Source: Phyllobates terribilis (Eukaryota). Taken from it: 64,000 bases of DNA. Location of the stretch: the NCBI RefSeq assembly GCF_046119375.1, contig NW_027362764.1, positions 806,992,001-807,056,000 of the forward strand, written 5' to 3'. The notes under the pieces were generated by a model. It was not told where the DNA came from. It did no database searches and worked only from the letters and a program-made list of their open reading frames with translations. Below, piece after piece: positions 9,001-30,315 of the stretch. The position numbers were made by a program, and so were the translations under genes. How positions within the stretch are numbered: position 1 is the first letter of the stretch; every line of letters begins with the position of its first letter.

Positions 9001-12000
9001 GGTGACATCTACTACATTATCTGTATTCAGAGAGTTATCACTGTGTTATTACATAGGACTGCAGGTGACATCTACTACATTATCTGTACTCAGAGAGTTA
9101 TCACTGTGTTATCTGTGGTGTTACATAGGACTGCAGGTGACATCTACTACATTATCTGTACTCAGAGAGATATCACTGTGTTATCTGTGGTGTTACATAG
9201 GACTGCAGGTGACATCTACTACATTATCTGTACTCAGAGAGTTATCACTGTGTTATCTGTGGTGTTACATAGGACTGCAGGTGACATCTACTACATTATC
9301 TGTACTCAGAGTTATCACTGTGTTATCTGTGGTGTTACATAGGACTGCAGGTGACATCTACTACATTATCTGTACTCAGAGAGTTATCACTGTGTTATCT
9401 GTGGTGTTACATAGGACTGCAGGTGACATCTACTACATTATCTGTACTCAGAGTTATCACTGTGTTATCTGTGGTGTTACATAGGACTGCAGGTGACATC
9501 TACTACATTATCTGTACTCAGAGAGTTATCACTGTGTTATCTGTGGTGTTACATAGGACTGCAGGTGACATCTACTACATTATCTGTACTCAGAGAGTTA
9601 TCACTGTGTTATCTGTGGTGTTACATAGGACTGCAGGTGACATCTACTACATTATCTGTACTCAGAGAGCTATCACTGTGTTATCTGTGGTGTTACATAG
9701 GACTGCGGGTGATACCTACTACATTATCTGTACTCAGAGAGATATCACTGTGTTATCTGTGGTGTTACATAGGACTGCAGGTGACACCTACTACATTATC
9801 TGTACTCAGAGAGTTATCACTGTGATATCTGTGGTGTTACATAGGACTGCAGGTGACACCTACTACATTATCTGTACTCAGAGTGTCATCACTGTGTTAT
9901 CTGTGGTGTTACATAGGACTGCAGGTGACATCTACTACATTATCTGTACTCAGAGAGTTATCACTGTGTTATCTGTGGTGTTACATAGGACTGCAGGTGA
10001 CATCTACTACATTATCTGTACTCAGAGTTATCACTGTGTTATCTGTGGTGTTACATAGGACTGCAGGTGACATCTACTACATTATCTGTACTCAGAGAGT
10101 TATCACTGTGTTATCTGTGGTGTTACATAGGACTGCAGGTGACATCTACTACATTATCTGTACTCAGAGTTATCACTGTGTTATCTGTGGTGTTACATAG
10201 GACTGCGGGTGATACCTACTACATTATCTGTACTCAGAGAGATATCACTGTGTTATCTGTGGTGTTACATAGGACTGCAGGTGACACCTACTACATTATC
10301 TGTACTCAGAGAGTTATCACTGTGATATCTGTGGTGTTACATAGGACTGCAGGTGACACCTACTACATTATCTGTACTCAGAGTGTCATCACTGTGTTAT
10401 CTGTGGTGTTACATAGGACTGCAGGTGACATCTACTACATTATCTGTACTCAGAGAGTCATCACTGTGTTATCTGTGGTGTTACATAGGACTGCAGGTGA
10501 CATCTACTACATTATCTGTACTCAGAGAGCTATCACTGTGTTATCTGTGGTGTTACATAGGACTGCGGGTGATACCTACTACATTATCTGTACTCAGAGA
10601 GATATCACTGTGTTATCTGTGGTGTTACATAGGACTGCAGGTGACACCTACTACATTATCTGTACTCAGAGAGTTATCACTGTGATATCTGTGGTGTTAC
10701 ATAGGACTGCAGGTGACATCTACTACATTATCTGTACTCAGAGAGTTATCACTGTGTTATCTGTGGTGTTACATAGGACTGCAGGTGACATCTACTACAT
10801 TATCTGTACTCAGAGAGATATCACTGTGTTATCTGTGGTGTTACATGGGACTGCAGGTGACATCTACTACATTATCTGTACTCAGAGAGTTATCACTGTG
10901 TTATCTGTGGTGTTACATGGGACTACAGGTGACATATACTACATTATCTGTACTCAGAGAGTGATCACTGTGTTATCTGTGCTGTTACATAGGACTGCAG
11001 GTGACATCTACTACATTATCTGTACTCAGAGAGTGATCACTGTGTTATCTGTGGTGTTACATAGGACTGCAGGTGACATCTACTACATTATCTGTACTCA
11101 GAGAGTTATCACTGTGCTATCTGTGGTGTTACATAGGACTGCGGGTGACATCTACTACATTATCTGTACTCAGAGAGTTATCACTGTGTTATCTGTGGTG
11201 TTACATAGGACTGCAGGTGACACCTACTACATTATCTGTACTCAGAGTGTCATCACTGTGTTATCTGTGGTGTTACATAGGACTGCAGGTGACATCTACT
11301 ACATTATCTGTACTCAGAGAGTTATCACTGTGCTATCTGTGGTGTTACATAGGACTGCGGGTGACATCTACTACATTATCTGTACTCAGAGAGTTATCAC
11401 TGTGTTATCTGTGGTGTTACATAGGACTGCAGGTGACATCTACTACATTATCTGTATTCAGAGAGTTATCACTGTGTTATTACATAGGACTGCAGGTGAC
11501 ATCTACTACATTATCTGTACTCAGAGAGTTATCACTGTGTTATCTGTGGTGTTACATAGGACTGCAGGTGACATCTACTACATTATCTGTACTCAGAGAG
11601 ATATCACTGTGTTATCTGTGGTGTTACATAGGACTGCAGGTGACATCTACTACATTATCTGTACTCAGAGAGTTATCACTGTGTTATCTGTGGTGTTACA
11701 TAGGACTGCAGGTGACATCTACTACATTATCTGTACTCAGAGTTATCACTGTGTTATCTGTGGTGTTACATAGGACTGCAGGTGACATCTACTACATTAT
11801 CTGTACTCAGAGAGTTATCACTGTGTTATCTGTGGTGTTACATAGGACTGCAGGTGACATCTACTACATTATCTGTACTCAGAGTTATCACTGTGTTATC
11901 TGTGGTGTTACATAGGACTGCAGGTGACATCTACTACATTATCTGTACTCAGAGAGTTATCACTGTGTTATCTGTGGTGTTACATAGGACTGCAGGTGAC

Positions 12001-13297
12001 ATCTACTACATTATCTGTACTCAGAGAGTTATCACTGTGTTATCTGTAGTGTTACATAGGACTGCAGGTGACATCTACTACATTATCTGTACTCAGAGAG
12101 TTATCACTGTGTTATCTGTGGTGTTACATAGGACTGCAGGTGTCATCTACTACATTATCTGTACTCAGAGAGTTATCACTGTGTTATCTGTGGCGTTACA
12201 TGGGACTGCAGGTGACATCTACTACATTATCTGTACTCAGAGAGTTATCACTGTGTTATCTGTAGTGTTACATAGGACTGCAGGTGACATCTACTACATT
12301 ATCTGTACTCAGAGAGTTATCACTGTGTTATCTGTGGTGTTACATAGGACTGCAGGTGTCATCTACTACATTATCTGTACTCAGAGAGTTATCACTGTGT
12401 TATCTGTGGCGTTACATAGGACTGCAGGTGACATCTACTACATTATCTGTACTCAGAGAGTTATCACTGTGTTACCTGTGGTGTTACATAGGACTGCAGG
12501 TGACATCTACTACATTATCTGTACTCAGAAAGTTATCACTGTGTTATCTGTGGTGTTACATAGGACTGCAGGTGACATCTACTACATTATGTGTACTCAG
12601 AGAGTTATCATTGTGTTATCTGTGGTGTTACATAGGACTGCAGGTGACATCTACTACATTATCTGTACTCAGAGAGTTATCACTGTGTTATCTGTGGTGT
12701 TACATAGGACTGCAGGTGACATCTACTACATTATCTGTACTCAGAGAGTTATCACTGTGTTATCTGTGGTGTTACATAGGACTGCTGGTGACATCTGCTA
12801 CATTATCTGTACTCAGAGAGTTATCACTGTGTTATCTGTGGTGTTACATAGGACTGCAGGTGACATCTACTACATTATCTGTACTCAGAGAGTTATCACT
12901 GTGTTATCTGTGGTGTTACATAGGACTGCTGGTGACATCTGCTACATTATCTGTACTCAGAGAGTTATCACTGTGTTATCTGTGGTGTTACATAGGACTG
13001 CAGGTGACATCTACTACATTATCTGTACTCAGAGAGTTATCACTGTGTTATCTGTGGTGTTACATAGGACTGCAGGTGTCATCTACTACATTATCTGTAC
13101 TCAGAGTTATCACTGTGTTATCTGTGGTGTTACATAGGACTGCAGGTGACATCTACTACATTATCTGTACTCAGAGAGTTATCACTGTGTTATCTGTGGT
13201 GTTACATAGGACTGCAGGTGACATCTACTACATTATCTGTACTCAGAGAGTTATCACTGTGTTATCTGTGGTGTTACATGGGACTGCAGGTGACATC
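1..13297 (+). repeat. 72-bp tandem satellite, about 185 copies, continues past the left window edge
   Basis: Monomer TTATCACTGTGTTATCTGTGGTGTTACATAGGACTGCAGGTGACATCTACTACATTATCTGTACTCAGAGAG. Length variants are 70 bp (GA lost), 73 bp (GTGTGT) and 63 bp. The ORF track shows the expected 24-aa periodicity. Clean match ends at GACATC 13297, with degenerate similarity to about 13308. Confidence 0.99.
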
Positions 13298-13659
13298 CAA
13301 TGCATTATAACTTGCTATCTCTCTGGTATGATACATTTTCCTGCATATAAGGGAGTTCAATCGCTTTTTCTTTTATCTCTAACATGAAGAACTGTATTAT
13401 GGTTTAAAGATTCAAGTTGCAGTACCACTTTCTACCACAGCTGGCTGCAAATCTTTCCATTAACACTTATGCAACAGCGCCCCCAGCTCTGTTCTAAAGG
13501 GAATCTGATGCTTTTCTTTGAAAACTAATAACTATGGATGGAGGCTTCACCTAATAATCACACAATCCTCCTCCTGTGTCTCAGGAGGAGCCGCAGAGTA
13601 ATCACTGATCAAATATAAATTCTATGTTCCCTCTAATTGGCCGTATCGTCTTCAGTCTT

Positions 13660-14306: not shown

Positions 14307-16884
14307 AGAATCTTATCATGTATCTCTGTATACAGGGAGCTCCCCCTAGTGGTGACTGCAGACAGATTCTTATCATGTATCTCTGTATATTGGGAGCTCC
14401 CCCTAGTGGTGGCTGCAGACAGGATCTTATCATGTATCTCTGTATACAGGAGACTCCCCCTAGTGGTGGCTGCAGACAGGATCTTATCATGTATCTCTGT
14501 ATACAGGGAGCTCCCACTAGTGGTGGCTGCAGACAGAATCTTATCATGTATCTCTGTATACAGGGAGCTCCCCCTAGTGGAGGCTGCAGACAGAATCTTA
14601 TCATGTATCTCTGTATACAGGGAGCTCCCCCTAGTGGTGACTACAGACAGATTCTTATCATGTATCTCTGTATACAGGGAGCTCCCCCTAGTGGTGGCTG
14701 CAGACAGGATCTTATCATGTATCTCTGTATACAGGGAGCTCCACCTAGTGGTGACTGCAGACAGAATCTTATCATGTATCTCTGTATACAGGCAGCTCCC
14801 CCTAGTGGTGACTGCAGACAGATTCTTATCATGTATCTCTGTATACAGGGAGCTCCCCCTAGTGGTGGCTGCAGACAGAATCTTATCATGTATCTCTGTA
14901 TACAGGGAGCTCCCCCTAGTGGTGACTGCAGACAGGATCTTATCATGTATCTCTGTATACAGGGAGCTCCCCCTAGTGGTGACTGCAGACAGATTCTTAT
15001 CATGTATCTCTGTATACAGGAGACTCCCCCTAGTGGTGGCTGCAGACAGAATCTTATCATGTATCTCTGTATACAGGGAGCTCCCCCTAGTGGTGACTGC
15101 AGACAGATTCTTATCATGTATCTCTGTATACAGGAGACTCCCCCTAGTGGTGGCTGCAGACAGGATCTTATCATGTATCTCTGTATACAGGGAGCTCCCC
15201 CTAGTGGTGGCTGCAGACAGAATCTTATCATGTATCTCTGTATACAGGAAGCTCCCCCTAGTGGTGGCTGCAGACAGTATCTTATCATCTGTCTCTGTAT
15301 ACAGGGAGCTCCCCCTAGTGGTGGCTGCAGACTGAATCTTATCATGTATCTCTGTATACAGGGAGCTCACCCTAGTGGTGGCTGCAGACAGGATCTTATC
15401 ATGTATCTCTGTATACAGGGAGCTCCCCCTAGTGGTGGCTGCAGACAGGATCTTATCATGTATCTCTGTATACAGGGAGCTCCCCCTAGTGGTGGCTGCA
15501 GATAGAATCTTATCATGTATCTCTGTATACAGGGAGCTCCCCCTACTGGTGGCTGCAGACAGGATCTTATGTATCTGTATACAGGGAGCTCCTGCTAGTG
15601 GAGGCTGCAGACAGGATCTTATCATGTATCTCTGTATACAGGGAGCTCCCCCTAGTGGTGGCTGCAGACAGAATCTTATCATGTATCTCTGTATACAGGG
15701 AGCTCCCCCTAGTGGTGGCTGCAGACAGGATCTTATCATGTATCTCTGTATATAGTGATCTCCCCCTAGTGATGGCTGCAGGCAGGATCTTATCATGTAT
15801 CTCTGTATACAGGGAACTCCCCCTAGTGGTGGTTGCAGACAGGATCTTATCATGTATCTCTGTATACAGGGAGCTCCCCCTAGTGATGACTGCAGACAGG
15901 ATCTTATCATGTATCTCTGTATACAGGGAGCTCCCCCTAGTGATGACTGCATACAGAATCTTATCATGTATCTCTGTATACAGGGAGCTCCCCCTAGTGG
16001 TGGCTGCAGACAGAACCTTATCATGTTTCTCTGTATACAGGGAGCCCCCCCCTAGTGATGACTGCATACAGAATCTTATCATGTATCTCTGTATACAGGG
16101 AGCTACCCCTAGTGGTGGCTGCAGACAGGATCTTATCATGTATCTCTGTATACAGGGAGCTCCCCCTAGTGGTGGCTGCAGACAGAACCTTATCATGTTT
16201 CTCTGTATACAGGGAGCCCCCCCCTAGTGATGACTGCATACAGAATCTTATCATGTATCTCTGTATACAGGGAGCTCCCCCTAGTGGTGGCTGCAGACAG
16301 AACCTTATCATGTATCTCTGTATACAGGGAGCTCCCCCTAGTGGTGGCTGCAGGCAGGATCTTATCATGTATCTCTGTATACAGGGAACTCCCCCTAGTG
16401 GTGGTTGCAGACAGGATCTTATCATGTATCTCTGTATACAGGGAGCTCCCCCTAGTGATGACTGCAGACAGGATCTTATCATGTATCTCTGTATACAGGG
16501 AGCTCCCCCTAGTGGTGACTGCAGACATAATCTTATCATGTATCTCTGTATACAGGGAGCTCCCTCTAGTGGTGGCTGCAGACAGAATCTTATCATGTAT
16601 CTCTGTATACAGGGAGCTACCCCTAGTGGTGGCTGCAGACAGGATCTTATCATGTATCTCTGTATACAGGTAGCACCCCCTAGTGGTGGCTGCAGACAGA
16701 ACCTTATCATGTTTCTCTGTATACAGGGAGCTCCCCCTAGTGGTGGATGCAGACAGAATCTTATCATGTATCTCTGTATACAGGGAGCTCCCCCTAGTGG
16801 TGACTGCAGACAGAATCTTATCATGTATCTCTGTATACAGGGAGCTCCCCCTAGTGGTGTTTGCAGACAGATTCTTATCATGTA
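14307..16884 (+). repeat. 57-bp minisatellite, about 45 copies
   Basis: Monomer TCTTATCATGTATCTCTGTATACAGGGAGCTCCCCCTAGTGGTGGCTGCAGACAGGA, giving 19-aa periodicity in the ORF track. Contains the palindromes CTGTATACAG and GGGAGCTCCC. A local 172-bp duplication is marked by GGGAGCCCCCCCCTAG at about 16041 and 16213. Confidence 0.98.
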
Positions 16885-17634
16885 CTCCCTATAGACCTCA
16901 GTGGAGGTATATTCAGTATTAGGATCCATTTTTCTTCCTTTCTGGTTCATGCATGAGACGTTGCCTCTGATATCAGGCACACAGACTGCTGGATGGAGGA
17001 GAATGAGTTTTCCTTTTCTGCATGTGTTTCGCCATTGTTCCATTTAGCTTTCGCCGAGGTATATTTTACATTTTAGACCTGTGTACACCAGTGCAATGCT
17101 GCATTGGAAATGTAGTACACGGAGCTGGAATCTGCATCGGACGAGCATGTGACGGGGAGACAGATAAGGGGTCTAAAATATATGAATCATCCTCTATGAG
17201 GGAATGATGAGAGTTGTTGTCCTGCAGGTGTGTGGGGTGCAGCCGGACATTGCGCTGTGAAGAGAAATATTTGCTTTCGCTCGTAGCCGGGAAACCAGAA
17301 GGACGCAATTAATTTCTTGCCATGTGTGAAATATGTCCCCACTTCTCGTCTCCTGGTTCTTTCTGCTCTTTCCTTGGGCAGAAGAAATTTGTCTGCGTGA
17401 GCGATGTCTGCTGACAGACTAAGCAGCTAAAAATGACATGTCAATAGGGCCACAATTAAGGGAATCGAGTCGGCGCAGCCTCCGGGGACGGATATTTATC
17501 TGAAATCAATGGCCACGAAAGCGGAAGAGGAGAAAATCCCGCTGCGAGTGTTTAGGGCCTCGCCAGGTAGTTTATGTCCTGTATGAGGAGAGACACGGAG
17601 ATGTGATGTGTGGTGCACCGCTGCCGAACACCGG

Positions 17635-20600
17635 GGAGAAGAGACAGAGACGTTATCTGAGGAAAAGAGACAGGAACATCATCTGGGAAAAAGAGACAGA
17701 GACGTCATCTGGGGGAGAAGAGACGTGACGTCATCCGGGGGAGAAGAGATGGAGACGTCATCCGGGGGAGAAGAGATGGGGACGTCATCTGGGGGAGAAG
17801 AGACGGGACGTCATCCGGGGGAGAAGAGACGGGACGTCATCCGGGGGAGAAGAGATGGGGACGTCACCTGGGGAAGAAGAGACTGGACGTCATCCGGGGG
17901 AGAAGAGACGGGACGTCATCCGGGAGAGAAGAGATGGGGACGTCATCCGGGGGAGAAGAGATGGGGACGTCATCTGGGGAAGAAGAGACTGGACGTCATC
18001 CGGGGGAGAAGAGACGGGACGTCATCCGGGGGAGAAGAGACGGGACGTCATCCGGGGGAGAAGAGACGGGACGTCATCCGGGGGAGAAGAGACGGGACGT
18101 CATCTGGGGGAGAAGAGATGGGGACGTCATCTGGGGGAGAAGAGATGGGGACGTCATCCGGGGGAGAAGAGACGGGACGTCATCCGGGGGAGAAGAGACG
18201 GGACGTCATCTGGGGGAGAAGAGATGGGGACGTCATCTGGGGGAGAAGAGATGGGGACGTCATCCGGGGGAGAAGAGACGGGACGTCATCCGGGGGAGAA
18301 GAGACGGGACGTCATCCGGGGGAGAAGAGACGGGATGTCATCCGGGGGAGAAGAGACGGGACGTCATCCGGGGGAGAAGAGATGGGGACGTCATCCGGGG
18401 GAGAAGAGATGGGGACGTCATCTGGGGAAGAAGAGACTGGACGTCATCCGGGGGAGAAGAGACGGGACGTCATCCGGGGGAGAAGAGACGGGACGTCATC
18501 CGGGGGAGAAGAGACGGGACGTCATCCGGGGGAGAAGAGATGGGGGCGTCATCCAGGGGAGAAGAGACGGGACGTCATCCGGGGGAGAAGAGATGGGGAC
18601 GTCATCTGGGGAAGAAGAGATGGGGACGTCCTCCGGGGGAGAAGAGATGGGGACGTCATCCGGGGGAGAAGAGATGGGGACGTCATCTGGAGAAGAAGAG
18701 ACTGGACGTCATCCGGGGGAGAAGAGACGGGACGTCATCCGGGGGAGAAGAGACGGGACGTCATCCGGGGGAGAAGAGACGGGACGTCATCCGGGGGAGA
18801 AGAGACGGGGGCGTCATCTGGGGAAGAAGAGACTGGACGTCATCCGGGGGAGAAGAGACGGGACGTCATCCAGGGGAGAAGAGGCGGGGACGTCATCTGA
18901 GGAAGAAGAGACTGGACGTCATCCGGGGGAGAAGAGACGGGACGTCATCCGGGAGAGAAGAGACGGGGGCGTCATCCGGGGGAGAAGAGATGGGGCGTCA
19001 TCCGGGGGAGAAGAGGCGGGGACGTCATCTGGGGAAGAAGAGACGGGACGTCATCCGGGGGAGAAGAGATGGGGACGTCATCCGGGGGAGAAGAGATGGG
19101 GACGTCCTCCGGGGGAGAAGAGATGGGGACGTCATCCGGGGGTGAAGAGACGGGGACGTCATCCGAGGGAGAAGAGACGGGACGTCATCCGAGGGAGAAG
19201 AGACGGGAACGTCATCCGGGGGAGAAGAGACAGGATCATCTGGGGAAGAAGAGACGGGACGTCATCCGGGGGAGAAGAGACGGGGGCGTCATTCGGGGGA
19301 GATGAGACAGGAACATCATCCGGGGAAGAAGAGACGGGACGTCATCCGGGGGAGAAGAGACGGGGGCGTCATCCGGGGGAGAAGAGACGGGGGCGTCATC
19401 CGGGGGAGAAGAGACAGGGGCGTCATCCGGGGGAGAAGAGGCGGGGACGTCATCCAGGGGAGAAGAGGCGGGGATATCATCCGGGGTAGAAGAGACAGGA
19501 ACATCATCCGGGGAAGAAGAGACGGGACATCATCCGGGGGAGAAGTAACGGGGGCGTCTTCCGGGGGAGAAGAGACGGGGACGTCATCTGGGGAAGAAGA
19601 GGCAGGGACGTCATCCGGGGGAGAAGAGACAGGAACATCATCCGGGGAAGAAGAGACGGGACGTCATCCGGGGGAGAAGAGACAGGGGCGTCATCCGGGG
19701 GAGAGGAGACGGGGACGTCATCCGGTGGGAGAAGAGACGGGGGCGTCATCCGAGGGAGAAGAGACGGGGACGTCATCCGGGGGAGAAGAGGCGGGGACGT
19801 CATCCGGGGGAGAAGAGGCGGGAACTTCATCCGGGAGAGAAGAGACGGGAACATCATCCGGGGAAGAAGAGACGGGACGTCATCCGGGGGAGAAGAGACG
19901 GGGGCGTCATCCGGGGGAGAAGAGACGGGGGCGTCATCTGGGGGAGAAGAGACGGGGGCGTCATCCGGGGGAGAAGAGACAGGGGCGTCATCCGGGGGAG
20001 AAGAGGCGGGGACGTCATCCAGGGGAGAAGAGGCGGGGATATCATCCGGGGTAGAAGAGACAGGAACATCATCCGGGGAAGAAGAGACGGGACGTCATCC
20101 GGGGGAGAAGTAACGGGGGCGTCTTCCGGGGGAGAAGAGACGGGGACGTCATCTGGGGAAGAAGAGGCAGGGACGTCATCCGGGGGAGAAGAGACAGGAA
20201 CATCATCCGGGGAAGAAGAGACGGGACGTCATCCGGGGGAGAAGAGACAGGGGCGTCATCCGGGGGAGAGGAGACGGGGACGTCATCCGGTGGGAGAAGA
20301 GACGGGGGCGTCATCCGAGGGAGAAGAGACGGGGACGTCATCCGGGTGAGAAGAGGCGGGGACGTCATCCGGGGGAGAAGAGGCGGGAACTTCATCCGGG
20401 AGAGAAGAGACTGGAACATCATCCGGGGAAGAAGAGACGGGACGTCATCCGGGGGAGAAGAAACGGGGGCGCCATCCGAGGGAGAAGAGACGGGGACGTC
20501 ATGCGGGGAAGAAGAGACGGAGACGTCATCCGGGGAGAAGAGACAGAGACGTCATCCGGGGAAGAGGAGACGGGACGTCAACTGGGGGAGAAGAGATGGG

Positions 20601-20640
20601 GACGTCATCTGGGGGAGAAGAGACGGGTAATCCGGGGAAA
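17635..20640 (+). repeat. Purine-rich 26/27-bp minisatellite, about 110 copies
   Basis: Monomer GGGACGTCATCCGGGGGAGAAGAGAC, with 27-bp GATGGGGACG variants. Both edges are degenerate. An internal ~565-bp block is duplicated (19504 vs 20069). Confidence 0.96.
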
Positions 20641-20658
20641 AGAGGCAGAGATGTCTGC

Positions 20659-21260
20659 GGTCTGTATTTAAGGGGTCAGGTCTGGGGGTCTGTATTTAGG
20701 GGGTTAAGTCTGGGGTCTGTATTTAGGGGGTTGGGTCTGGGGTCTGTATTTAGGGGGTCAGGTCTGAATGAAGGGGGTCAGGTCTGGGGTCTGTATTTAG
20801 AGGGTCAGGTCTGGGATCTGTATTTAGGGGGTCAGGTCTGGATGAAGGGGGTCAGGTCTGGGGTCTGCATTTAGGGGGCCGGGTCTGGGGTCTGTATTTA
20901 GGGGGTCATGTCTGGGGTCTGTACTTAGGGGGTCAGGTCTTTGGTCTGTATTTAGGGGGTCAGGTCTTGGGTCTGTATTTAGGGGGTCAGGACTGGGGTC
21001 TGTATTAAGGGGGTCAGGTCTTGGGTCTGTATTTAGGGGGTCAGGACTGTGGTCTGTATTTAGGGGGTCAGGTCTTGGGTCTGTATTTAAGGGGTCAGGT
21101 CTGGGGTCTGTATTTAGGTCTCAGGTCAGACTCTGAAAATAAATTCAGACCCCAGATCAGCCATTAAAATTAATATAGACCCCAGACCAGACCCCTGAAA
21201 AATACCCAGACTTCAGGCCAGACACCTGAAATAAATTCTGACTCCAGACCCTAGATCTGA
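20659..21260 (+). repeat. 27-bp G-rich tandem repeat (about 17 copies) followed by degenerate inverted copies
   Basis: CTGTATTTAGGGGGTCAGGTCTGGGGT repeats to about 21122. Reverse-complement remnants (TAAATTCAGACCCC, ATAGACCCCAGACC) follow at about 21139-21260. Confidence 0.9.
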
Positions 21261-22541
21261 TTTCGACCTTGGCCCACACCCTGATGGCGGGGGGTCTGCA
21301 CGGTCCGGGCAGCTGGTGCTCCAGGTCCAGATATGAACTCGACACCTATAGGGTATTCTTGTCTCAGACATCTTAGGTTATGTGATGCTTTATGTTCTTT
21401 TTTATGTCCCTTTTTAGACCATCCATGATGACAATGAGCCCCTGTCCATCGCCCGACAGATCCACCCGGCCCTGGATCCCTGCAGGAGGGGTCTCTGGGA
21501 TGTGACCCCTTTAATACACGGTCTTCAGGTTGAGTGACAACACCGGCAGAGCCTGGACGGACGAGCGGGCACGTAGTAATGCTGTGCAGAGACTTGGGGG
21601 ATGCTGGGAGGTGTTGAGAGGACGAATATGTCTTTTTCCACCGCAGGTCACAGACGTTTCACTCCCTGACTGACGAGGATAAAACATTGTCGTCGGCAAA
21701 AAGCGTGAATGACTCCTGGAGACGCGGTGGCACTTACATACGCCATCATCTCATCATCTAATGCTTCTCTAGGTCTGAAGTACAAGGTCTGCAGCTCTCA
21801 GCCATTATCCCCTCCGCTGGGGATGAACATCACAGGGTGGAGCAGATGATCTGTCGGGGGATGAGCAGAGCGCCCCCTTATGTCCACACCGTCTCCTCCT
21901 GTCGTCGCCTGCAGCTGCTCGGGAAATCAATTCTGGACGAATTGTGTGACATATAGGGAGGTGAAGTACCAAGACCACGACGTGTGGGGGACACGATACA
22001 ATGGAGACGGATGAAGAGGGAGAAGGAGGGAACATGGAAGCAGCAAGACGGGCAAGCCCCAAATATCATAAGACCAAGAGTCAGGACCAACGGGGTACAT
22101 GGCTGGGTCATCAAATGGGGGAGAAAAACACCCGGAAACCAGAGAGGGTCATTAGGTCCCCAGATATGGGACTAGAAAATTACTGGATATCTGGATCACC
22201 ACTTATGACCACCACATCACTAAACATATAGCGGGTGAAATAACTAATGAACTCGTCACCAATTTCCTAAGTAAATCTATTTCGAAAGCTGCTATCCACA
22301 CAGGCAAAGAAATCACCATAGATGTCAATGTCGATGTAATAATGAGAAATGACACTGGGAAAAGTATTAAACACATGAAGAAATAGAGGAGCAAAACGCC
22401 CTGGAAAGTCCTGACACCGACTGAGATCTATCAGTAATTAGAAAGCAATCCTGACACTTAGTGACCAATAATATCAGCCAGTTCAAATGATCGCTGATAA
22501 AAATGTGTCTCATTATCAAGGCGCCACACAAGAACCATCTC

Positions 22542-24176
22542 ATGATGTGTAAAACCAGTGAACTGCCTCAAGACCTTCACAACCTTATTGCTGCAAAACA
22601 TGCTGAGGTTATTGGTTACAAAAGAATTTCTAAAACTACTGAAGGTTCCAGTGAGCGCTGCTGGGGCCATAATCTGGAAGTGGAAACAAAATGATTTCAC
22701 CATAAACCGGCTACGACCATGTGCTCCCCGCAAGATGTCAGACAGAGGAGTGAAAAGAATTAACAAAAGAGTTGTCCAAGGGTCAAGGACCATCTGTGGA
22801 GAGCTACAGAAAGACCTGCAATCAGCAGGCACAATTGTTTAACAAAAAACTATAAGTAATGCACTCAACCTCCATGGCCTGTATGCATGTTCACCATGCA
22901 ACCTCCATGGCCCGTATGCAGGCTCACCACGCAATCTCCATGGCCTGTATGCATTCTCACCAGGCAACCTCCATGGCCTGTATGCACGCTCACCACACAA
23001 CCTCCATGGCCTGTATGCACGCTCACCACGCAACCTCCATGGCCTGAATGCACGCTCACCACGCAACCTCCATCACCTGTATGCACGCTCACCACACAAC
23101 CTCCATGGCCTGTATGCTCGCTCACCACACAACCTCCATCGCCTGTATGCACGCTCACCACGCAACCTCCATGGCCTGTATGCACGCTCACCACGCAACC
23201 TCCATGGCCTGTATGCACGCTCACCACGCAACCTCCATGGCCTGTATGCACGCTCACCACGCAACCTCCATGGCCTGTATTCACACTCACCATGCAACCT
23301 CCATGGCCTGTATGCACGCTCACCACGCAACCTCCATGGCCTGTATGCACGCTCACCACGCAACCTCCATGGCCTGTATTCACACTCACCATGCAACCTC
23401 CATGGCCTGTATGCACGCTCACCATGCAACCTCCATGGCCTGTATTCACACTCACCATGCAACCTCCATGGCCTGTATGCACGCTCACCACGCAACCTCC
23501 ATGGCCTGCATGCACGCTCACCACACAACCTCCATGGCCTGTATGCACGCTCACCACGCAACCTCCATGGCCTGTATGTATGCTCACCATGCAACCTCCA
23601 TGGCCTGTATGCATGCTCACCACGCAACCTCTATGGCCTGTATGCAAGCTCACCAGGCAACCTCCATGGCCTGTATGCACGCTCACCACGCAACCTCCAT
23701 GGCCTGTATGCACGCTCACCACACAACCTCCATGACCTGTATGCTCGCTCACCACGCAACCTCCATGGTCTGTATGCTCGCTCACCACGCTACCTCCATG
23801 GTCTGTATGCACGCTCACCACACAACCTCCATGACCTGTATGCACGCTCACCACGCAACCTCCATGGCCTGTATGCTCGCTCACCACGCAACCTCCCAAA
23901 CACACAGCCAAGGAAATTCTCAAATGGTTTTTGAGAAAGAATATAAATCTGCTAGAATGGCCGAGCCGATCACCGGACCTGAATCCAATAGAAAATGTGT
24001 GGAAGGAACTAAAGCTCAGAGATCATAGAAGGAGCCACAGAAGCTTCAGGATGTGACGAGTGTTTGTGTGGAAGAATGGGCTAAAATCCCACCTGAGCAA
24101 TGTCTGCCACTAGTTTCTCCATCAGGCGGAGCCTTGAAGCTTCATCACCAACAAAGGCTTTTGTGCAAAGTATTAA
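22542..24176 (+). pseudogene. Tc1 transposase pseudogene (element A)
   Basis: N-terminal part: MMCKTSELPQDLHNLIAAKH..GYKRISK / LLKVPVSAAGAIIWKWK..RPCAPRKMSDRG..GELQKDLQSAGTIV*QKTISNALNLHGLYA, with a frameshift near 22635 and a stop at 22840. After the array: PKHTAKEILKWFLRKNINLLEWPSRSPDLNPIENVW..KGFCAKY*. The two catalytic Asp motifs (WSDE, QDND) are absent; the Glu motif (NPIE) is present. Confidence 0.93.
22866..23895 (+). repeat. 33-bp minisatellite derived from Tc1 transposase coding sequence, about 31 copies
   Basis: Monomer CAACCTCCATGGCCTGTATGCACGCTCACCACG. In the transposase frame it reads NLHGLYARSPR and is continuous with the upstream TISNAL codons. Confidence 0.97.
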
Positions 24177-24399
24177 ATACATTTCAGTAAGGGTGTGCAA
24201 TATTTTTTCCCTGCGTCACTTCTCATTATTACACATAATTTATGGAAATCTATAGTGATTTCTTTGCTGCGTGGATTGGATGGGATCTTACCGACATCTG
24301 GGGAGAATTTCATGTCAATAGCACCTTTACAAATACATTTACTTAGAAAACTGGCAATGTGTTCAATACTAATTTCACCCACTGTATACACTGCATATA

Positions 24400-24560
24400 C
24401 AGCTTGTGCGAAAGTTTAGGCAAGTGTATAATAAATGCTGCAGAGAAGATTCATACACAGAAGGGTTAATAGTATATTTTTATAAATTATCAAAATTAAA
24501 AGTGATGAAAAGAGAAATGTAAATTTCATCAGTATCTGGTGACCGCCCGTCGCCTCCATC
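24400..24560 (-). mobile_element. Tc1/mariner element B: 3' end only
   Basis: TA (24398-99) is followed by the TIR-like CAGCTTGTGCGAAAGTTTAGGCAAG and about 130 bp of AT-rich UTR. On the minus strand follows GAG GCG ACG GGC GGT CAC C AGA TAC TGA, resembling the Tc1 transposase C-terminus (KAKGGHTKY*). Family assignment rests on general knowledge of Tc1 ends. Confidence 0.72.
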
Positions 24561-27002
24561 ATCAGTATCTGGTGACCGCCCGTCACCTCCATCATCAGTA
24601 TCTGGTGACCGCCCGTCACCTCCATCATCAGTATCTGGTGACCGCCCGTCACCTCCATCATCAGTATCTGGTGACCGCCCGTCGCCTCCATCATCAGTAT
24701 CTGGTGACCGCCCGTCGCCTCCATCATCAGTATCTGGTGACCGCCCGTCGCCTCCATCATCAGTATCTGGTGACCGCCCGTCGCCTCCATCATCAGTATC
24801 TGGTGACCGCCCGTCACCTCCATCATCAGTATCTGGTGACCGCCCGTCACCTCCATCATCAGTATCTGGTGACCGCCCGTCGCCTCCATCATCAGTATCT
24901 GGTGACCGCCCGTCACCTCCATCATCAGTATCTGGTGACCGCCCGTCACCTCCATCATCAGTATCTGGTGACCGCCCGTCGCCTCCATCATCAGTATCTG
25001 GTGACCGCCCGTCACCTCCATCATCAGTATCTGGTGACCGCCCGTCACCTCCATCATCAGTATCTGGTGACCGCCCATCGCCTCCATCATCAGTATCTGG
25101 TCACTGCCCGTCACCTCCATCATCAGTATCTGGTGACCACCTATCACCTCCATCTCTGGTGACTGCCCGTCTCCTCCATCATCAGTATCTGGTGACCGCC
25201 TGTCGCCACCATCATCAGTATCTGGTGACTACCTATCACCTCCATCATCAGTATCTGGTGACTGCCCGTCTCCTCCATCATCAGTATCTGGTGACCGCCT
25301 GTCGCCACCATCATCAGTATCTGGTGACCACCCATCGCCTCCATCATCAGTATCTAGTGACTAACTATCACCTCCATCATCAGTATCTGGTGACTACCTA
25401 TCACCTCCATCATCATTATCTGGTGACTGCCCGTCCCCTCCATCATCAGTATCTGGTGACTGCCCGTCCCCTCCATCATCAGTATTTAGTGACCGCCTGT
25501 CGTCTCCATCATCAGTATCTGGTGACCGCCCGTCTTCTCCATCATCAGTATCTGGTGACCGCCCGTCTCCTCCATCATCAGTATCTGGTCACCGCCCGTC
25601 TCCTCTATCATCAGAATCTGGTGACTGCCCGTCTCCTCCATCATCAGTATCTGATGACCGCCCGTCTCCTCCATCATCAGTATCTGGTGACCGCCCGTCT
25701 CCTCCATCATCAGTATCTGGTCACCGCCCGTCTCCTCCATCATCAGTAACTGGTGACCGCCTGTCGCCTCCACCATCAGTATCTGGTGACCGCCTGTCTC
25801 CTCCATCATCAGTATCTGGTGACCACCCGTCACCTCCATCATCAGTATCTGGTGACTGCCCGTCACCTCCATCATCAGTATCTGGTGACCGCCCGTCTCC
25901 TCCATCATCAGTATCTGGTGACCGCCCGTCTCCTCCATCATCAGTATCTGGTGACCGCCCGTCACCTCCATCATCAGTATCTGGTGACCGCCTGTCCCCT
26001 CCATCATCAGTATCTGGTGACCGCCCGTCTCCTCCATCATCAGTATCTGGTGACCGCCCGTCTCCTCCATCATCAGTATCTGGTGACCGCCCGTCTCCTC
26101 CATCATCAGTATCTGGTGACCGCCCGTCTCCTCCATCATCAGTATCTGGTGACCGCCCGTCTGCTCCATCATCAGTATCTGGTGACCGCCCGTCTCCTCC
26201 ATCATCAGTATCTGGTCACCGCCCGTCTCCTCCATCATCAGTATCTGGTCACCGCCCGTCTCCTCCATCATCAGTATCTGGTCACCGCCCGTCTCCTCCA
26301 TCATCAGTATCTGGTCACCGCCCGTCTCCTCCATCATCAGTATCTGGTCACCGCCCGTCTCCTCCATCATCAGTATCTGGTCACCGCCCGTCTCCTCCAT
26401 CATCAGTATCTGGTCACCGCCCGTCTCCTCCATCATCAGTATCTGGTCACCGCCCGTCTCCTCCATCATCAGTATCTGGTCACCGCCCGTCTCCTCCATC
26501 ATCAGTATCTGGTCACCGCCCGTCTCCTCCATCATCAGTATCTGGTCACCGCCCGTCTCCTCCATCATCAGTATCTGGTCACCGCCCGTCTCCTCCATCA
26601 TCAGTATCTGGTCACCGCCCGTCTCCTCCATCATCAGTATCTGGTGACCGCCCGTCTCCTCCATCATCAGTATCTGGTCACCGCCCGTCACCCCCATCAT
26701 CAGTATCTGGTCACCGCCCGTCTCCTCCATCATCAGTATCTGGTCACCGCCCGTCTCCTCCATCATCAGTATCTGGTCACCGCCCGTCTCCTCCATCATC
26801 AGTATCTGGTCACCGCCCGTCTCCTCCATCATCAGTATCTGGTCACCGCCCGTCTCCTCCATCATCAGTATCTGGTCACCGCCCGTCTCCTCCATCATCA
26901 GTATCTGGTCACCGCCCGTCTCCTCCATCATCAGTATCTGGTCACCGCCCGTCTCCTCCATCATCAGTATCTGGTCACCGCCCGTCTCCTCCATCATCAG
27001 TA
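24527..27002 (+). repeat. 33-bp minisatellite, about 75 copies
   Basis: Monomer CATCAGTATCTGGTGACCGCCCGTCTCCTCCAT, giving 11-aa periodicity (HHQYLVTARLL / MMEETGGHQIL). Confidence 0.98.
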
Positions 27003-27004
27003 TC

Positions 27005-27254
27005 CTATTTTTGCACTGTTAATTCTTCCTGCTTTACATTTTGCTGTATACTCTTCTGCTTCATAGTTTTTACTTTTTTTTTGATGCAATAAATGTAACT
27101 CCAGTTTTCTTCATGGAAAGTCTTTCTTTGCTTTCACAGATGAGGTTTTGGATTTTGCTCAATCTCTGCTCCAATAAATTGTATTTACATTTTACTTTTT
27201 AGAAATTCTGCAATTATCTCCATCTGAGCTTTTGCTGCACTAAATTCTGCTGCA
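27005..27254 (+). repeat. Left portion of an old degenerate AT-rich array, interrupted by Tc1 element C
   Basis: TTTTGCTGCACTAAATTCTGCTGC and CTCTGCTCCAATAAATT match the motifs recurring at 30316-31905. Confidence 0.65.
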
Positions 27255-27292
27255 TACAGTGGGTACGGAAAGTATTCAGACCCCTTTACATT
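27255..27292 (+). mobile_element. Orphan 38-bp duplicate of the element C terminus (TA plus TIR start)
   Basis: TACAGTGGGTACGGAAAGTATTCAGACCCCTTTACATT is identical to 28693-28730. Confidence 0.95.
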
Positions 27293-28692
27293 ACGGATCT
27301 TGTACTGATCCTGAGTTAAATCCTGTATTATACCCCAGAGCTGCACTCACTATTCTGCTGGTGCAGTCACTGTGTACATACATTACATTACTGATCCTGA
27401 GCTACATCCTGTATTATACTCCAGAGCTGCACTCACTATTCTGATGGTGCAGTCACTGTGTACATACATTACATTACTGATCCTGAGTTACATCCTGTAT
27501 TATACCCCAGAGCTGCACTCACTATTCTGATGGTGCAGTCACTGTGTACATACATTACATTACTGATCCTGCACTGATCCTGAGTTATATCCTGTATTAT
27601 AATCCAGAGCTGCACTCACTATTCTGCTGGTGGAGTCACTGTGTACATACATTACATTACTGATCCTGAGTTACATCCTGTATTATACTCCAGAGCTGCA
27701 CTCACTATTCTGATGGTGCAGTCACTGTGTACATACATTACATTACTGATCCTGCACTGATCCTGAGTTATATCCTGTATTATAATCCAGAGCTGCACTC
27801 ACTATTCTGCTGGTGCAGTCACTGTGTACATACATTACATTACTGATCCTGAGTTACATCCTGTATTATACTCCAGAGCTGCACTCACTATTCTGCTGGT
27901 GCAGTCACTGTGTACATACATTACATTACTGATCCTGAGTTACATCCTGTATTATACCCCAGAGCTGCACTCACTATTCTGCTGGTGCAGTCACTGTGTA
28001 CATACATTACATTACTGATCCTGAGTTACATCCTGTATTATACCCCAGAGCTGCACTCACTATTCTGCTGGTGCAGTCACTGTGTACATACATTACATTA
28101 CTGATCCTGAGTTACATCCTGTATTATACTCCAGAGCTGCACTCACTATTCTGCTGGAGCAGTCACTGTGTACATACATTATATTACTGATCCTGAGTTA
28201 CATCCTGTATTATACTCCAGAGCTGCACTCACTATTCTGCTGGTGGAGTCACTGTGTACATACATTACATTACTGATCCTGAGTTACATCCTGTATTATA
28301 CTCCAGAGCTGCACTCACTATTCTGCTGGAGCAGTCACTGTGTACATACATTACATTACTGATCCTGAGTTACATCCTGTATTATACTCCAGAGCTGCAC
28401 TCACTATTCTGCTGGTGGAGTCACTGTGTACATACATTACATTACTGATCCTGAGTTACATCCTGTATTATACTCCAGAGCTGCACTCACTATTCTGCTG
28501 GTGCAGTCACTGTGTACATACATTACATTACTGATCCTGAGTTACCTCCTGTATTATACTCCAGAGCTGCACTCACTATTCTGCTGGTGCAGTCACTGTG
28601 TACATACATTATATTACTGATCCTGAGTTACATCCGGTATTATACTCCAGAGCTGCACTCACTATTCTGCTGGAGCAGTCACTGTGTACATG
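27293..28692 (+). repeat. 86-bp satellite, about 16 copies
   Basis: Monomer ACTGTGTACATACATTACATTACTGATCCTGAGTTACATCCTGTATTATACTCCAGAGCTGCACTCACTATTCTGCTGGTGCAGTC. Near-identical small ORFs recur every 86 bp. Two units carry an extra 11 bp (GCACTGATCCT). Confidence 0.98.
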
Positions 28693-28694
28693 TA

Positions 28695-30313
28695 CAGTGG
28701 GTACGGAAAGTATTCAGACCCCTTTACATTTTTCACTCTTTGTTTCATTGCAGCTATTTGGTAAATTCTATAAAGTTCATTTTTTTTCTCATTAAAGTCC
28801 ACTCTGCACCCCATCTTGACTGAAAAAAAACAGAAATGTAGAAATTTTTGCAAATGTATTAAAAAAGAAAAACTGAGATATCACATGGTCATAAGTATTC
28901 AGACCCTTTGCTCAGTATTGAGTAGAAGCCCCCTTTTGAGCTTGTACAGCCGTGAGTCTTCTTGGAAATGATGCAACAGGTTTTTCACCCCTGGATTTGG
29001 GGGTCCTCTGCCATTCTTCCTTGCAGATCCTCTCCAGTTCCGTCAGGTTGGATGGTGAGCGTTGGTGGACAGCCATTTTCAGGTCTCTCCAGAGATGCTC
29101 AATTGGGTTTAGGTCAGGGCTCTGGCTGGGCCAGTCAAGAATGGTCACAGAGTTGTTCTGAAGCCACTCCTTTGTTATTTTAGCTGTGTGCTTAGGGTCA
29201 TTGTCTTGTTGGAAGGTGAACCTTCGGCCAAGTCTGAGGTCCGCAGCACTCTGGAAGAGGTTTTCATCCAGGATATCTCTGTACTTGGCCGCATTCATGT
29301 TTCCTTCAATTGCAACCAGTCGTCCTGTCCCTGCAGCTGAAAAATACCCCCATAGCATGATGCAGCCACCACCATGTCTCACTGTTGGGATTGTATTGGG
29401 CAGGTGATGAGCAGTGCCTGGTTTTCTCCACACATACCGCTTAGAATTATCACCAAAAAGTTCTCTTTGTCTCATCAGACCAGAGAATCTTATTTCTCAT
29501 AGTCTGGGAGTCCTTCATGTGTTTTTAAGCAAACTCTATGCGGGCTTTCATATGTCTTGCACTGAGGAGAGGCTTCCGTCAGTCCACTCTGCCATAAAGG
29601 CCCGACTGGTGGAGGGCTGCAGTGAGAGTTGACCTTGTAGAACTTTCTCCCATCTCCCTACTGCATCTCTGGAGCTCAGCCGCAGTGATCTTGGGGTTCT
29701 TCTTTACCTCTCTCACCAAGGCTCTTCTCCCACAATTGCCCTGTTTGGCTGGATGGCCAGGTCTAGGAAGACTTCTGGTGGTCCCAAACTTCTTCCATTT
29801 AAGGATTATGGAGGCCACTGTGCTCTGAGGAACCTTGAGTAATGCAGAGATTCTTTTGTAACCTTGGCCAGATCTGTGCCTTGCCACAATTCTGTCTCTG
29901 AGCTCCTTGGGCAGTTCCTTTGAGCTCATGATTCTCATTTGGTCTGACATGCACTGTGAGCTGTGAGGTCTTATATAGACAGGTGTGCGCCTTTCCAAGT
30001 CAAGTCCTATCAGTTTAATTAAACACAGCTGGACTCCAATGAAGGAGTAGAACCATCTCAAGGAGGATCACAAGGAAATGGACACCATGTGACTTAAATA
30101 TGGGTCTGAATACTTATGACCATGTGCTATTTCAGTTTTTCTTTTTTAATAAATTTGCAAAACTCTCTACATTTCTGTTTTTTTTTCAGTCAAGATGGGG
30201 TGCAGAGTGGACTGTAAGGAGAAAAAAATGAACTTTTTAGAATTTACCAAATGGCTGCAATGAAACAAAGAGTGAAAAATTTTAAGGGGTCTGAAGACTT
30301 TCCGTTCCCACTG
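28695..30313 (-). mobile_element. Full-length Tc1 element C (1619 bp, IR/DR-type TIRs of about 215 bp, TA target duplication)
   Basis: TA|CAGTGGGTACGGAAAGTATTCAGACCCC at 28695 and GGGGTCTGAAGACTTTCCGTTCCCACTG|TA ending at 30313. Inner direct repeats AAGTATTCAGACCC at about 28895 and GGGTCTGAATACTT at about 30102. Confidence 0.98.
28912..29938 (-). pseudogene. Tc1 DD34E transposase pseudogene (element C)
   Basis: MSSKELPKELRDRIVARHRSGQGYKRIS..WSDE..VWRKPG..HGGGCIMLWGYFS..FQQDNDPKHTA..WPSQSPDLNPIEHLW..KGASTQY*. In-frame stops near 29580 (GRVD*) and 29526 (EFA*), plus a frameshift just after WSDETK. Confidence 0.97.
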
Positions 30314-30315
30314 TA

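What the first reader, a model, noticed from the sequence alone, without database searches (positions are those of the whole stretch)
22430..30315. A Tc1 cluster acting as a satellite nursery: three of three elements are tied to tandem arrays
Seen within 8 kb: element A amplified 11 of its own codons, element B amplified its stop-codon region, and element C received a foreign satellite in its terminus. The two self-derived units are both exactly 33 bp though unrelated in sequence, and both replace deleted transposon sequence. Known: satellites arising from transposon segments are documented (for example MITE-derived arrays in Xenopus), and Tc1 excision leaves double-strand breaks repaired by synthesis-dependent annealing. 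Inference: aborted gap repair with reiterative template slippage at Tc1 loci may be a recurrent generator of the minisatellites that dominate this genome, possibly with a preferred unit length.
Basis: partly seen in the sequence, partly recalled or inferred. Interest (0 to 1): 0.72.

Follow-up and report, generated by a model that had tools for sequence, protein, structure and literature searches.

The report
Dead Tc1 transposons among frog minisatellites
In a poison-frog-like genome region that is 84% tandem repeats, one dead Tc1 transposon has turned 33 bases of its own gene into an array. The two neighbouring arrays belong to widespread older repeat families, so this is an ordinary case of transposon-derived satellite DNA, not a local "nursery".

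Summary
The structures are real, but the "nursery" reading does not hold.

**Element A (22229-24384).** This is a decayed Tc1. Its 33-bp array (22869-23896, about 31 units) is its own codons N-L-H-G-L-Y-A-R-S-P-R. It sits at the native site and replaces about 385 bp of the catalytic core. Contigs from public runs give the intact parent sequence on both sides of the break.

**"Element B".** Only a one-sided 126-bp tail remains (24400-24525). I could not confirm that it is Tc1. Its 33-bp unit is an abundant satellite:
- It occurs at other loci in Ranitomeya imitator and Phyllobates terribilis.
- Its summed word depth is 10^4-10^5 times single-copy depth in runs labelled as three organisms.

**Element C (28695-30313).** This is a full-length dead Tc1. 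The 86-bp block lies between two exact 38-bp copies of TA plus the tip of C's terminal inverted repeat (TIR). The unit is unrelated to C and also occurs in Eleutherodactylus coqui.

**Overall.** At most one of the three arrays was born in this lineage of elements. With 84% of the window in arrays, adjacency is expected. The shared 33-bp period has a counterpart in two unrelated neighbouring 27-bp arrays. Gap repair is compatible with A and C but is not distinguished from slippage or unequal exchange.

The scan has noted several other Tc1-derived arrays in this genome, with units of 32, 33 and 71 bp. This is a new member of a known kind, of low to moderate interest.

The parts
22229..24384 (+). 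Element A: decayed, internally deleted Tc1-like transposon. It has TA at 22227-8 and 24385-6, long degenerate TIRs, an N-terminal HTH coding region at 22541-22868 and a C-terminal DDE_3 piece from 23897.
   Evidence: TIR alignment. Pfam HTH_SB scores 23.3 bits, below the cutoff; DDE_3 scores 37.3 bits, above it. At least 38 sites in 23897-24384 have nearly all family contigs carrying another letter.
22869..23896 (+). 33-bp array of element A: the native copy, about 30 further copies and a 5-nt stub. In the transposase frame it reads NLHGLYARSPR. The unit-to-unit junction is CGCAA|CCTCC. The array ends at CCTCC|CAAACAC, which corresponds to DNDP|KHTAK.
   Evidence: TRF. Register print. The frame is open through the array. 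Parent sequence from contig loose ends reads GACTCCATTGCTGAAC... after 23891 and ...CAAGACAATGA before 23894. The missing part equals about 385 nt in element C. 25 of 47 unit differences fall at the 4 CpG positions.
24400..24525 (-). "Element B": a 126-bp tail that starts with TA|CAGCTTGTGCGAAAGTTTAGGCA. It is read as the 3' UTR and end of a Tc1 whose gene would lie on the minus strand. Its Tc1 identity is not confirmed here.
   Evidence: Sequence. Minus-strand frame reads ...AVTRY**. There is no significant similarity to the tails of A or C. Outer 50 bp are near single-copy, with depth 15-27 against 11.3 for a unique contig; the inner part occurs tens to hundreds of times.
24526..27004 (-). 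B-type 33-bp array of about 75 units in three domains: a left domain (24526 to about 25150), a diverged middle with a 26-bp unit that shifts the register, and a homogenised right domain holding 23 identical units.
   Evidence: TRF. Unit census. The same 11-aa-period peptide occurs in predicted proteins of Ranitomeya imitator (P0001, P0002, P0004) and Phyllobates terribilis (P0003). Summed depth is 0.3-1.26 million in four runs.
27005..27254 (.). Degenerate 27/28-bp minisatellite (TTTGCTGCAATAAATTCTGCTCCAAAC type). It continues at 30316 to about 31900 and is the insertion target of element C.
   Evidence: Sequence. Repeat families D1-D5. TRF rows at 30892 and 31663.
27255..27292 (+). Exact 38-bp copy of TA plus the first 36 nt of element C's TIR.
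   Evidence: 38/38 identity to 28693-28730.
27293..28692 (+). Block of 86-bp satellite, about 16 units, unrelated to element C. The left junction shares TACATT with the TIR tip. The right junction is ...GTGTACATG|TACAGTGGG.
   Evidence: TRF. Sequence. No BLAST similarity to C. Unit peptides occur in Eleutherodactylus coqui (P0008) and two ENA contigs.
28695..30313 (-). Element C: full-length (1,619 bp) dead Tc1-like transposon with TIRs of about 217 bp (200/217 identical). TA lies at 28693-4 and 30314-5. The transposase is broken by a stop and frameshifts.
   Evidence: Inverted repeats. Pfam HTH_SB, HTH_Tnp_Tc3_2 and DDE_3. Frames. TIR identity.

Best explanation
This is a mosaic of old, dead Tc1 copies and minisatellites in an array-prone, satellite-dominated region of a dendrobatid (poison-frog) genome. 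It is not a site where three arrays were born.

**Element A.**
- Shown: a 33-bp segment of the transposase gene was duplicated in tandem. The parent carries a short direct repeat at its borders (CTCAA|CCTCCAT ... CGCAA|GACTCCAT), and the junction used CAA.
- Inferred: the copy number then grew by slippage, unequal exchange or repeat-destabilising break repair.
- Shown: a deletion of about 385 bp runs from inside a secondary unit to the DNDP|KHTAK codons, so at least one duplication preceded or accompanied it.

**The B array.**
- Shown: it is one locus of an abundant 33-bp satellite shared by several dendrobatid species.
- Inferred: its unit and its 126-bp flank look like the last codons, stop codon and 3' end of a Tc1. 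The family probably started that way, long ago and not necessarily here.

**Element C.**
- Shown: it inserted into a degenerate 27/28-bp minisatellite.
- Shown: 1.4 kb of an old, widespread frog 86-bp repeat now sits between two exact copies of TA plus the TIR tip, with short microhomology at the left junction.
- Inferred: the block arrived by break repair or template switching.

The shared 33-bp period is coincidence.
For: - **A's unit comes from A's family.** The unit is in frame and in place. It is homologous to C's HQSGLYGRV(A)RR, and relative P0012 reads GLYGRVARRKPLL. Contigs give the parent's continuation on both sides of the break, in 48-70 contigs per run for the left side.
- **A is old.** At 38 or more of 488 sites it differs from almost all family contigs. 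TIR segments are about 79% alike. Over half of the array's variation is at CpG positions.
- **B is not local.** Its peptides occur in three R. imitator contigs and one P. terribilis contig, some with variants absent from the window. Depth is 0.3-1.26 million against 11.3 for the unique A/B junction contig, in runs labelled as three organisms.
- **The 86-bp unit is foreign and old**.
- **The region is array-prone.** 84% of the window is array. A second equal-period pair of unrelated units exists.
- **Tc1 is very abundant in dendrobatids.** D. tinctorius has 897,264 annotated copies, 6.57% of the assembly (PMC11152451). Tc1-seeded arrays are therefore expected by mass action.
- **The kind is known.** Satellites arising from TE segments and DSB-repair or microhomology models are reviewed in PMC9659126 and PMC12628747.
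Against: - Depth from Logan contigs is a poor copy-number measure. The unit counts are order-of-magnitude only.
- The A-unit bin also counts the single native copy in every A-family element. The evidence for other A-type arrays therefore rests on tandem-junction contigs in other organisms' runs, and on unit variants absent from the window. Some of those variants could be allelic.
- B's Tc1 origin was not verified here, because no parent copy could be fetched.
- Several independent notes of Tc1-derived arrays in this genome could mean that Tc1 really is over-represented as a seed. I could not test this genome-wide.
Confidence: 0.65

Rival explanations
1. After Tc1 excision the gap is repaired from the sister copy by synthesis-dependent strand annealing. 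Repair aborts and the nascent strand slips repeatedly. That produces an internal deletion plus a tandem array in one event, recurrently at Tc1 loci and perhaps with a preferred unit length. Under this model all three local arrays are products of the process.
For: - In A the deletion and the array are contiguous, and the left breakpoint lies inside a repeat unit.
- Junctions carry 2-6 nt of microhomology: CAA, CC, TACATT.
- In C the duplicated segment starts exactly at TA plus the element end. This fits one nascent strand that copied the whole element and another that copied 38 nt and then switched template.
- From established knowledge: abortive gap repair makes internal deletions in P, Ac/Ds and mariner elements, and DSB repair across tandem repeats changes copy number.
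- Other windows of this genome are noted to hold Tc1-derived arrays (unchecked).
Against: - B and the 86-bp unit are widespread families, not local products.
- No Tc1 sequence survives on the far side of B.
- Unit lengths of Tc1-derived arrays noted elsewhere are 32, 33 and 71 bp. Unrelated non-Tc1 neighbours share a 27-bp period.
- Arrays are also noted from exons in this genome, so array birth is not specific to excision sites.
- Two- to three-nucleotide microhomologies do not discriminate between mechanisms.
Confidence: 0.15
2. Arrays ride on mobile elements. A Tc1 derivative that already carried a short internal array (of A type or B type) was spread by transposition, as with miDNA4 and Xstir in Xenopus. 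Each copy then expanded or contracted locally. The arrays here are inherited cargo rather than local births.
For: - B-type arrays lie at many loci in at least two genera.
- The 25 bp next to the array (24502-24527) is present hundreds of times. That is within an order of magnitude of a guessed array count.
- A scan note describes a Tc1 subfamily with a variable 71-bp array (unchecked).
- The model is published for a Tc1/mariner MITE (PMC12628747).
Against: - The outer 50 bp of B's tail, where a TIR should be, is near single-copy at 85% likeness. Most B-type arrays therefore do not carry this end.
- No second end exists here.
- No contig was seen to bridge A's deletion junction, though only the longest pieces are listed.
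- The A-array protein search was blank.
Confidence: 0.15
3. Assembly artefact: the arrays or their junctions with the Tc1 pieces are mis-joins in a repeat-rich assembly.
For: - Dendrobatid assemblies collapse and break at repeats (PMC12208295).
- Array copy numbers cannot be checked with short contigs.
Against: - A 226-nt contig of run X1 spans A's right TIR, the spacer, B's tail and the start of the B array with no difference.
- Tandem junctions of both units occur in all four runs.
- Array variation is CpG-biased, as expected of real germline DNA.
Confidence: 0.03

Closest known systems
miDNA4 of Xenopus tropicalis (Tc1/mariner MITE with an internal satellite motif; Scalvenzi and Pollet 2014, as summarised in PMC12628747 and PMC9659126)
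   Same: A Tc1/mariner-superfamily element in a frog carries a tandem motif that is single in most copies and expanded in some. Microhomologies at the motif borders are invoked for internal deletions and array growth.
   Different: In miDNA4 the motif is thought to have been captured, and the element is a short non-coding MITE. In element A the unit is 11 codons of the transposase gene of a full-size Tc1. Spread of an array-bearing subfamily is not shown here.
Xstir satellite from the Xmix MITE of Xenopus laevis (Hikosaka and Kawahara 2004, as summarised in PMC12628747)
   Same: Tandem repeats are derived from the internal sequence of a DNA transposon. MITE-only, array-only and composite forms coexist. 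The B-type array with a one-sided transposon tail looks like such a composite or decayed form.
   Different: A different element family and unit. The stem-loop replication model proposed there needs two adjacent elements, which is not the arrangement here.
Tetris foldback transposon and the TIR-220 satellite of Drosophila virilis (PMC4079207)
   Same: A satellite is built from a segment of a DNA transposon and is found both inside elements and as free arrays.
   Different: The source there is the TIR, and the units are longer. Here the source is coding sequence (A) or the stop-codon region (B, inferred).
Internal-deletion derivatives made by abortive gap repair
   Same: Element A keeps both ends and has lost an internal stretch, with short homology at the junction. 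P0012 shows that relatives of element C also exist as internally deleted derivatives.
   Different: Classical derivatives have at most short filler, not a 1-kb array. The mechanism cannot be read from one junction.

Membership tests
Tc1-like (DD34E) DNA transposon: element A | TA target-site duplication and terminal inverted repeats starting CAGTG | tested here: met
   TA at 22227-8 and 24385-6. The ends read TAGCGGGTGAAAT and ATTTCACCCACTG. TIR segments are about 79% alike.
Tc1-like (DD34E) DNA transposon: element A | Transposase with a paired-like HTH and a DDE_3 catalytic domain | tested here: inconclusive
   The C-terminal piece passes Pfam DDE_3 (37.3 bits, cutoff 28.6). HTH_SB scores only 23.3 bits (cutoff 43). 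The stretch that in element C holds WSDET and DNDP is deleted. This is a remnant of a member, not an intact one.
Tc1-like (DD34E) DNA transposon: element C | TA duplication, CAGTG TIRs, and HTH plus DDE_3 transposase | tested here: met
   TA on both sides. TIRs are 200/217 identical. HTH_SB scores 90.9, HTH_Tnp_Tc3_2 37.6 and DDE_3 58.1 bits. The reading frame is broken.
Tc1-like (DD34E) DNA transposon: "element B" | Two inverted ends, TA duplication and transposase coding sequence | tested here: inconclusive
   There is one end only (TA|CAGCTTGTG...) and no second end in the window. No coding sequence remains except an "AVTRY**" reading of the unit. The tail is not significantly similar to the tails of A or C. 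An earlier scan follow-up on another locus calls a 33-bp array Tc1-tail-derived; I did not verify this.
Transposon-derived minisatellite or satellite DNA | The unit is colinear with a segment of the parent element, and the array sits at that segment's native position | tested here: met
   Met for A: upstream sequence runs continuously into the first unit, and the parent's flanks were recovered from contigs. For B this holds on one side only. It is not met for the 86-bp unit, which shows no similarity to C.
Locally born ("nursery") array | The unit is private to this locus or lineage and absent elsewhere | tested here: not met
   The B unit occurs in R. imitator and P. terribilis proteins and at huge depth in runs labelled as three organisms. 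The 86-bp unit occurs in E. coqui. A-type tandem junctions occur in runs labelled as two other organisms, and unit variants absent from the window occur in the window organism's own runs.
Abortive gap-repair product | An internal deletion with retained ends, short direct repeats at the breakpoints, and dependence on excision | not testable with these tools
   Retained ends and 2-3 nt microhomologies are seen. Dependence on excision cannot be read from the sequence.

The most novel reading that the evidence does not exclude
In dendrobatid genomes, Tc1 elements are disproportionately frequent seeds of minisatellites. Repeated excision and synthesis-dependent gap repair across short internal duplications drives array birth and growth. 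Such Tc1-derived arrays would make up a noticeable part of the large "unclassified" repeat fraction of these 6-13 Gb genomes.
Probability: 0.15. Interest if true: 0.6.

Novelty: new member of a known kind. Interest (0 to 1): 0.3.

Why it matters
Element A is an unusually legible example of a coding segment of a DNA transposon becoming a minisatellite. The parent sequence, the duplication borders and the later deletion can all be read.

Poison-frog genome papers report huge Tc1 loads and a majority of unclassified repeats. The three I searched do not use the words satellite or tandem repeat. A systematic link between Tc1 and arrays would help annotate these genomes. As it stands, the locus shows nothing beyond known routes from transposon to satellite.

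Tried and rejected
I could not fetch the DNA around the R. imitator and P. terribilis B-type arrays, nor an intact parent of B.
- **The A array translated in the transposase frame found no protein**. This blank says little, since only one of six frames was tried and length limits apply.
- **Relatedness among all nine local units was tested against shuffles.** Nothing was convincing. The best were 57 vs 33A at z 3.0 and 27a vs 28 at z 2.9, among 36 comparisons. I had suspected that 33B descends from the neighbouring 27-bp unit, but the result was only z 2.4, so I dropped the idea.
- **B's tail against the tails of A and C was not significant**.
- **No further Tc1 copies of these families are in the window**. 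No Pfam domain was found in the eight longest open frames of the non-array segments, and no Rfam family in 13000-47000.
- **I considered a simple insertion of C into the 86-bp array and rejected it.** C's right flank is the 27/28-bp minisatellite, not the 86-bp unit.
- **Read laying was used on 23852-24624 only**, to avoid long repeats.
- **The large representative protein search was not used.**


Full report
**Setting.**
- The window has no N.
- 84% of it is tandem array. A 72-bp satellite occupies 1-13308 and, inverted, 46462-64000.
- Between these lie arrays of 57, 27, 27, 33, 33, 86 and 28 bp.
- Protein hits point to a dendrobatid frog: Ranitomeya imitator and Phyllobates terribilis. Other agents' notes call it the golden poison frog; I did not test this.

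**Element A.**
- It spans 22229-24384, with TA on both sides and long degenerate TIRs. The finding's start at 22430 lies inside it.
- Pfam finds DDE_3 (37.3 bits) in the C-terminal piece and a weak HTH_SB in the N-terminal piece.
- The coding frame reads ...KTISNALNLHGLYA.SP. and then repeats NLHGLYARSPR about 31 times without a stop. The homologous stretch of element C reads LHQSGLYGRVD*RKPLL.
- Laying Logan contigs of four runs on 23852-24624 recovered the parent. 48-70 contigs per run leave the window after 23891 with GACTCCATTGCTGAACAAAAAGCATGTTCA, which reads RKTPLLNKKHVQ with the preceding codon.
- Contigs of run X13 enter at 23894 from ...GGACATTTCAGCAAGACAATGA, which reads WTFQQDND.
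- The duplicated segment is therefore CCTCC...CGCAA (33 nt). It is bordered in the parent by CTCAA|CCTCCAT and CGCAA|GACTCCAT, and the tandem junction used CAA.
- The array ends five bases into a unit, at CCTCC|CAAACAC, with a CC overlap with the parent's GACCCAAAC. The deletion therefore followed or accompanied at least one duplication.
- The deletion equals about 385 nt in C. In C that stretch includes WSDET and DNDP, where the first two catalytic aspartates would lie.
- A is old. At 38 or more of 488 sites nearly all family contigs carry another letter.
- Array units differ from their consensus at 4.6% of sites. 25 of 47 differences fall at the four CpG positions.

**"Element B".**
- Only 24400-24525 remains, preceded by TA and starting CAGCTTGTGCGAAAG.
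- On the minus strand the unit reads WRRRAVTRY**. From memory, not tested, this resembles Tc1 C-termini.
- A's own end reads ...KGFCAKY* and C's reads ...KGASTQY*.
- DNA similarity to the tails of A and C is not significant. A and C do not resemble each other there either.
- The far side of the array is the 27/28-bp minisatellite, so no deletion within an element can be shown.
- The array has three domains and a 26-bp unit that shifts the register.
- The array family is not local. Its 11-aa-period peptide occurs in three R. imitator contigs and one P. terribilis contig, some with variants absent here.
- Summed contig depth over the unit is 0.82-0.86 million in X1, 1.24-1.26 million in X5, and 0.32-0.46 million in X8 and X13. 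These runs carry three organism labels.
- By comparison, a 226-nt contig that spans the unique A/B junction without a difference has depth 11.3.
- The outer 50 bp of the tail has depth 15-27 in X1. The inner 75 bp has about 500-7,600.
- These figures are rough. They still place the unit at 10^4-10^5 copies, which is a few megabases.
- An earlier follow-up describes about 250 copies of a 33-base unit made of the last nine codons and stop of a Tc1 on another piece. This is probably the same family, but I could not compare sequences.

**Element C.**
- It spans 28695-30313 on the minus strand, with TA on both sides and TIRs 200/217 identical.
- All three Tc1 domains are present, in a broken frame.
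- Both outer flanks are the same degenerate minisatellite.
- The 86-bp block (27293-28692) lies between exact 38-bp copies of TA plus the TIR tip.
- The left junction shares TACATT with the unit's tail. The right junction is ...GTGTACATG|TACAGTGGG.
- The unit has no similarity to C.
- Its peptides occur in an Eleutherodactylus coqui protein and two ENA contigs, so it is an old, widespread frog repeat.
- The two tip copies are identical, while C's two TIRs differ at 8% of positions (17 of 217). This suggests the block arrived after C inserted. It is weak evidence: about 3 differences would be expected, so P is roughly 0.05.

**Interpretation.**
- One array (A) demonstrably comes from its host family. 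One (B) probably descends from a Tc1 tail but belongs to a widespread satellite. One (the 86-bp block) is foreign.
- Array-type junctions of the A unit occur in about 50 contigs in each of the four runs, including those labelled as two other organisms. Unit variants absent from this window occur in X1 and X5. Even A's array is therefore not clearly private.
- With Tc1 near 6.6% of a dendrobatid assembly and arrays everywhere, Tc1-seeded arrays are expected.
- The equal 33-bp period is matched by an unrelated 27/27 pair next door. It is contradicted by the 32- and 71-bp Tc1-derived units noted elsewhere.
- Gap repair with template switching fits A's deletion-plus-array and fits C's structure rather well. 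Nothing here separates it from slippage, end joining or unequal exchange.
- The general idea is already in the literature on transposon-derived satellites.

**Limits.**
- All runs were contigs, not raw reads.
- Only 773 bases were laid.
- No genome-wide count was possible.

Noticed in passing
window 17633-21118 and 22862-27004: Two pairs of neighbouring arrays share a period but not sequence: 27/27 bp and 33/33 bp. This may be chance, but it happens twice among about seven neighbour pairs.
   Followed up: partly
window 1-13308 and 46462-64000: The same 72-bp satellite flanks the whole 33-kb mosaic in opposite orientations. This makes a very large inverted arrangement.
   Followed up: no
window 27303-28691; proteins P0006-P0008: The 86-bp unit is conserved enough to be recognised in predicted proteins of Eleutherodactylus coqui and in two short ENA contigs. 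It is therefore an old repeat shared across frog families.
   Followed up: partly
protein P0012: A relative of element C exists as an internally deleted derivative. TIR-encoded peptide is joined to ...QSGLYGRVARRKPLL, and WSDET is joined to ILDWPSQSPD. One breakpoint lies next to the same GLYGR region that seeded A's array.
   Followed up: no
window 14307-16884: Another agent's note on a different piece says the 57-bp array belongs to a very abundant satellite copied from the end of a frog transposon. If so, a further local monomer has a transposon origin.
   Followed up: no
window 24385-24399: Elements A and B lie end to end, separated only by TA, an 11-bp spacer (TACACTGCATA) and TA. A contig of run X1 spans this junction without a difference.
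   Followed up: partly
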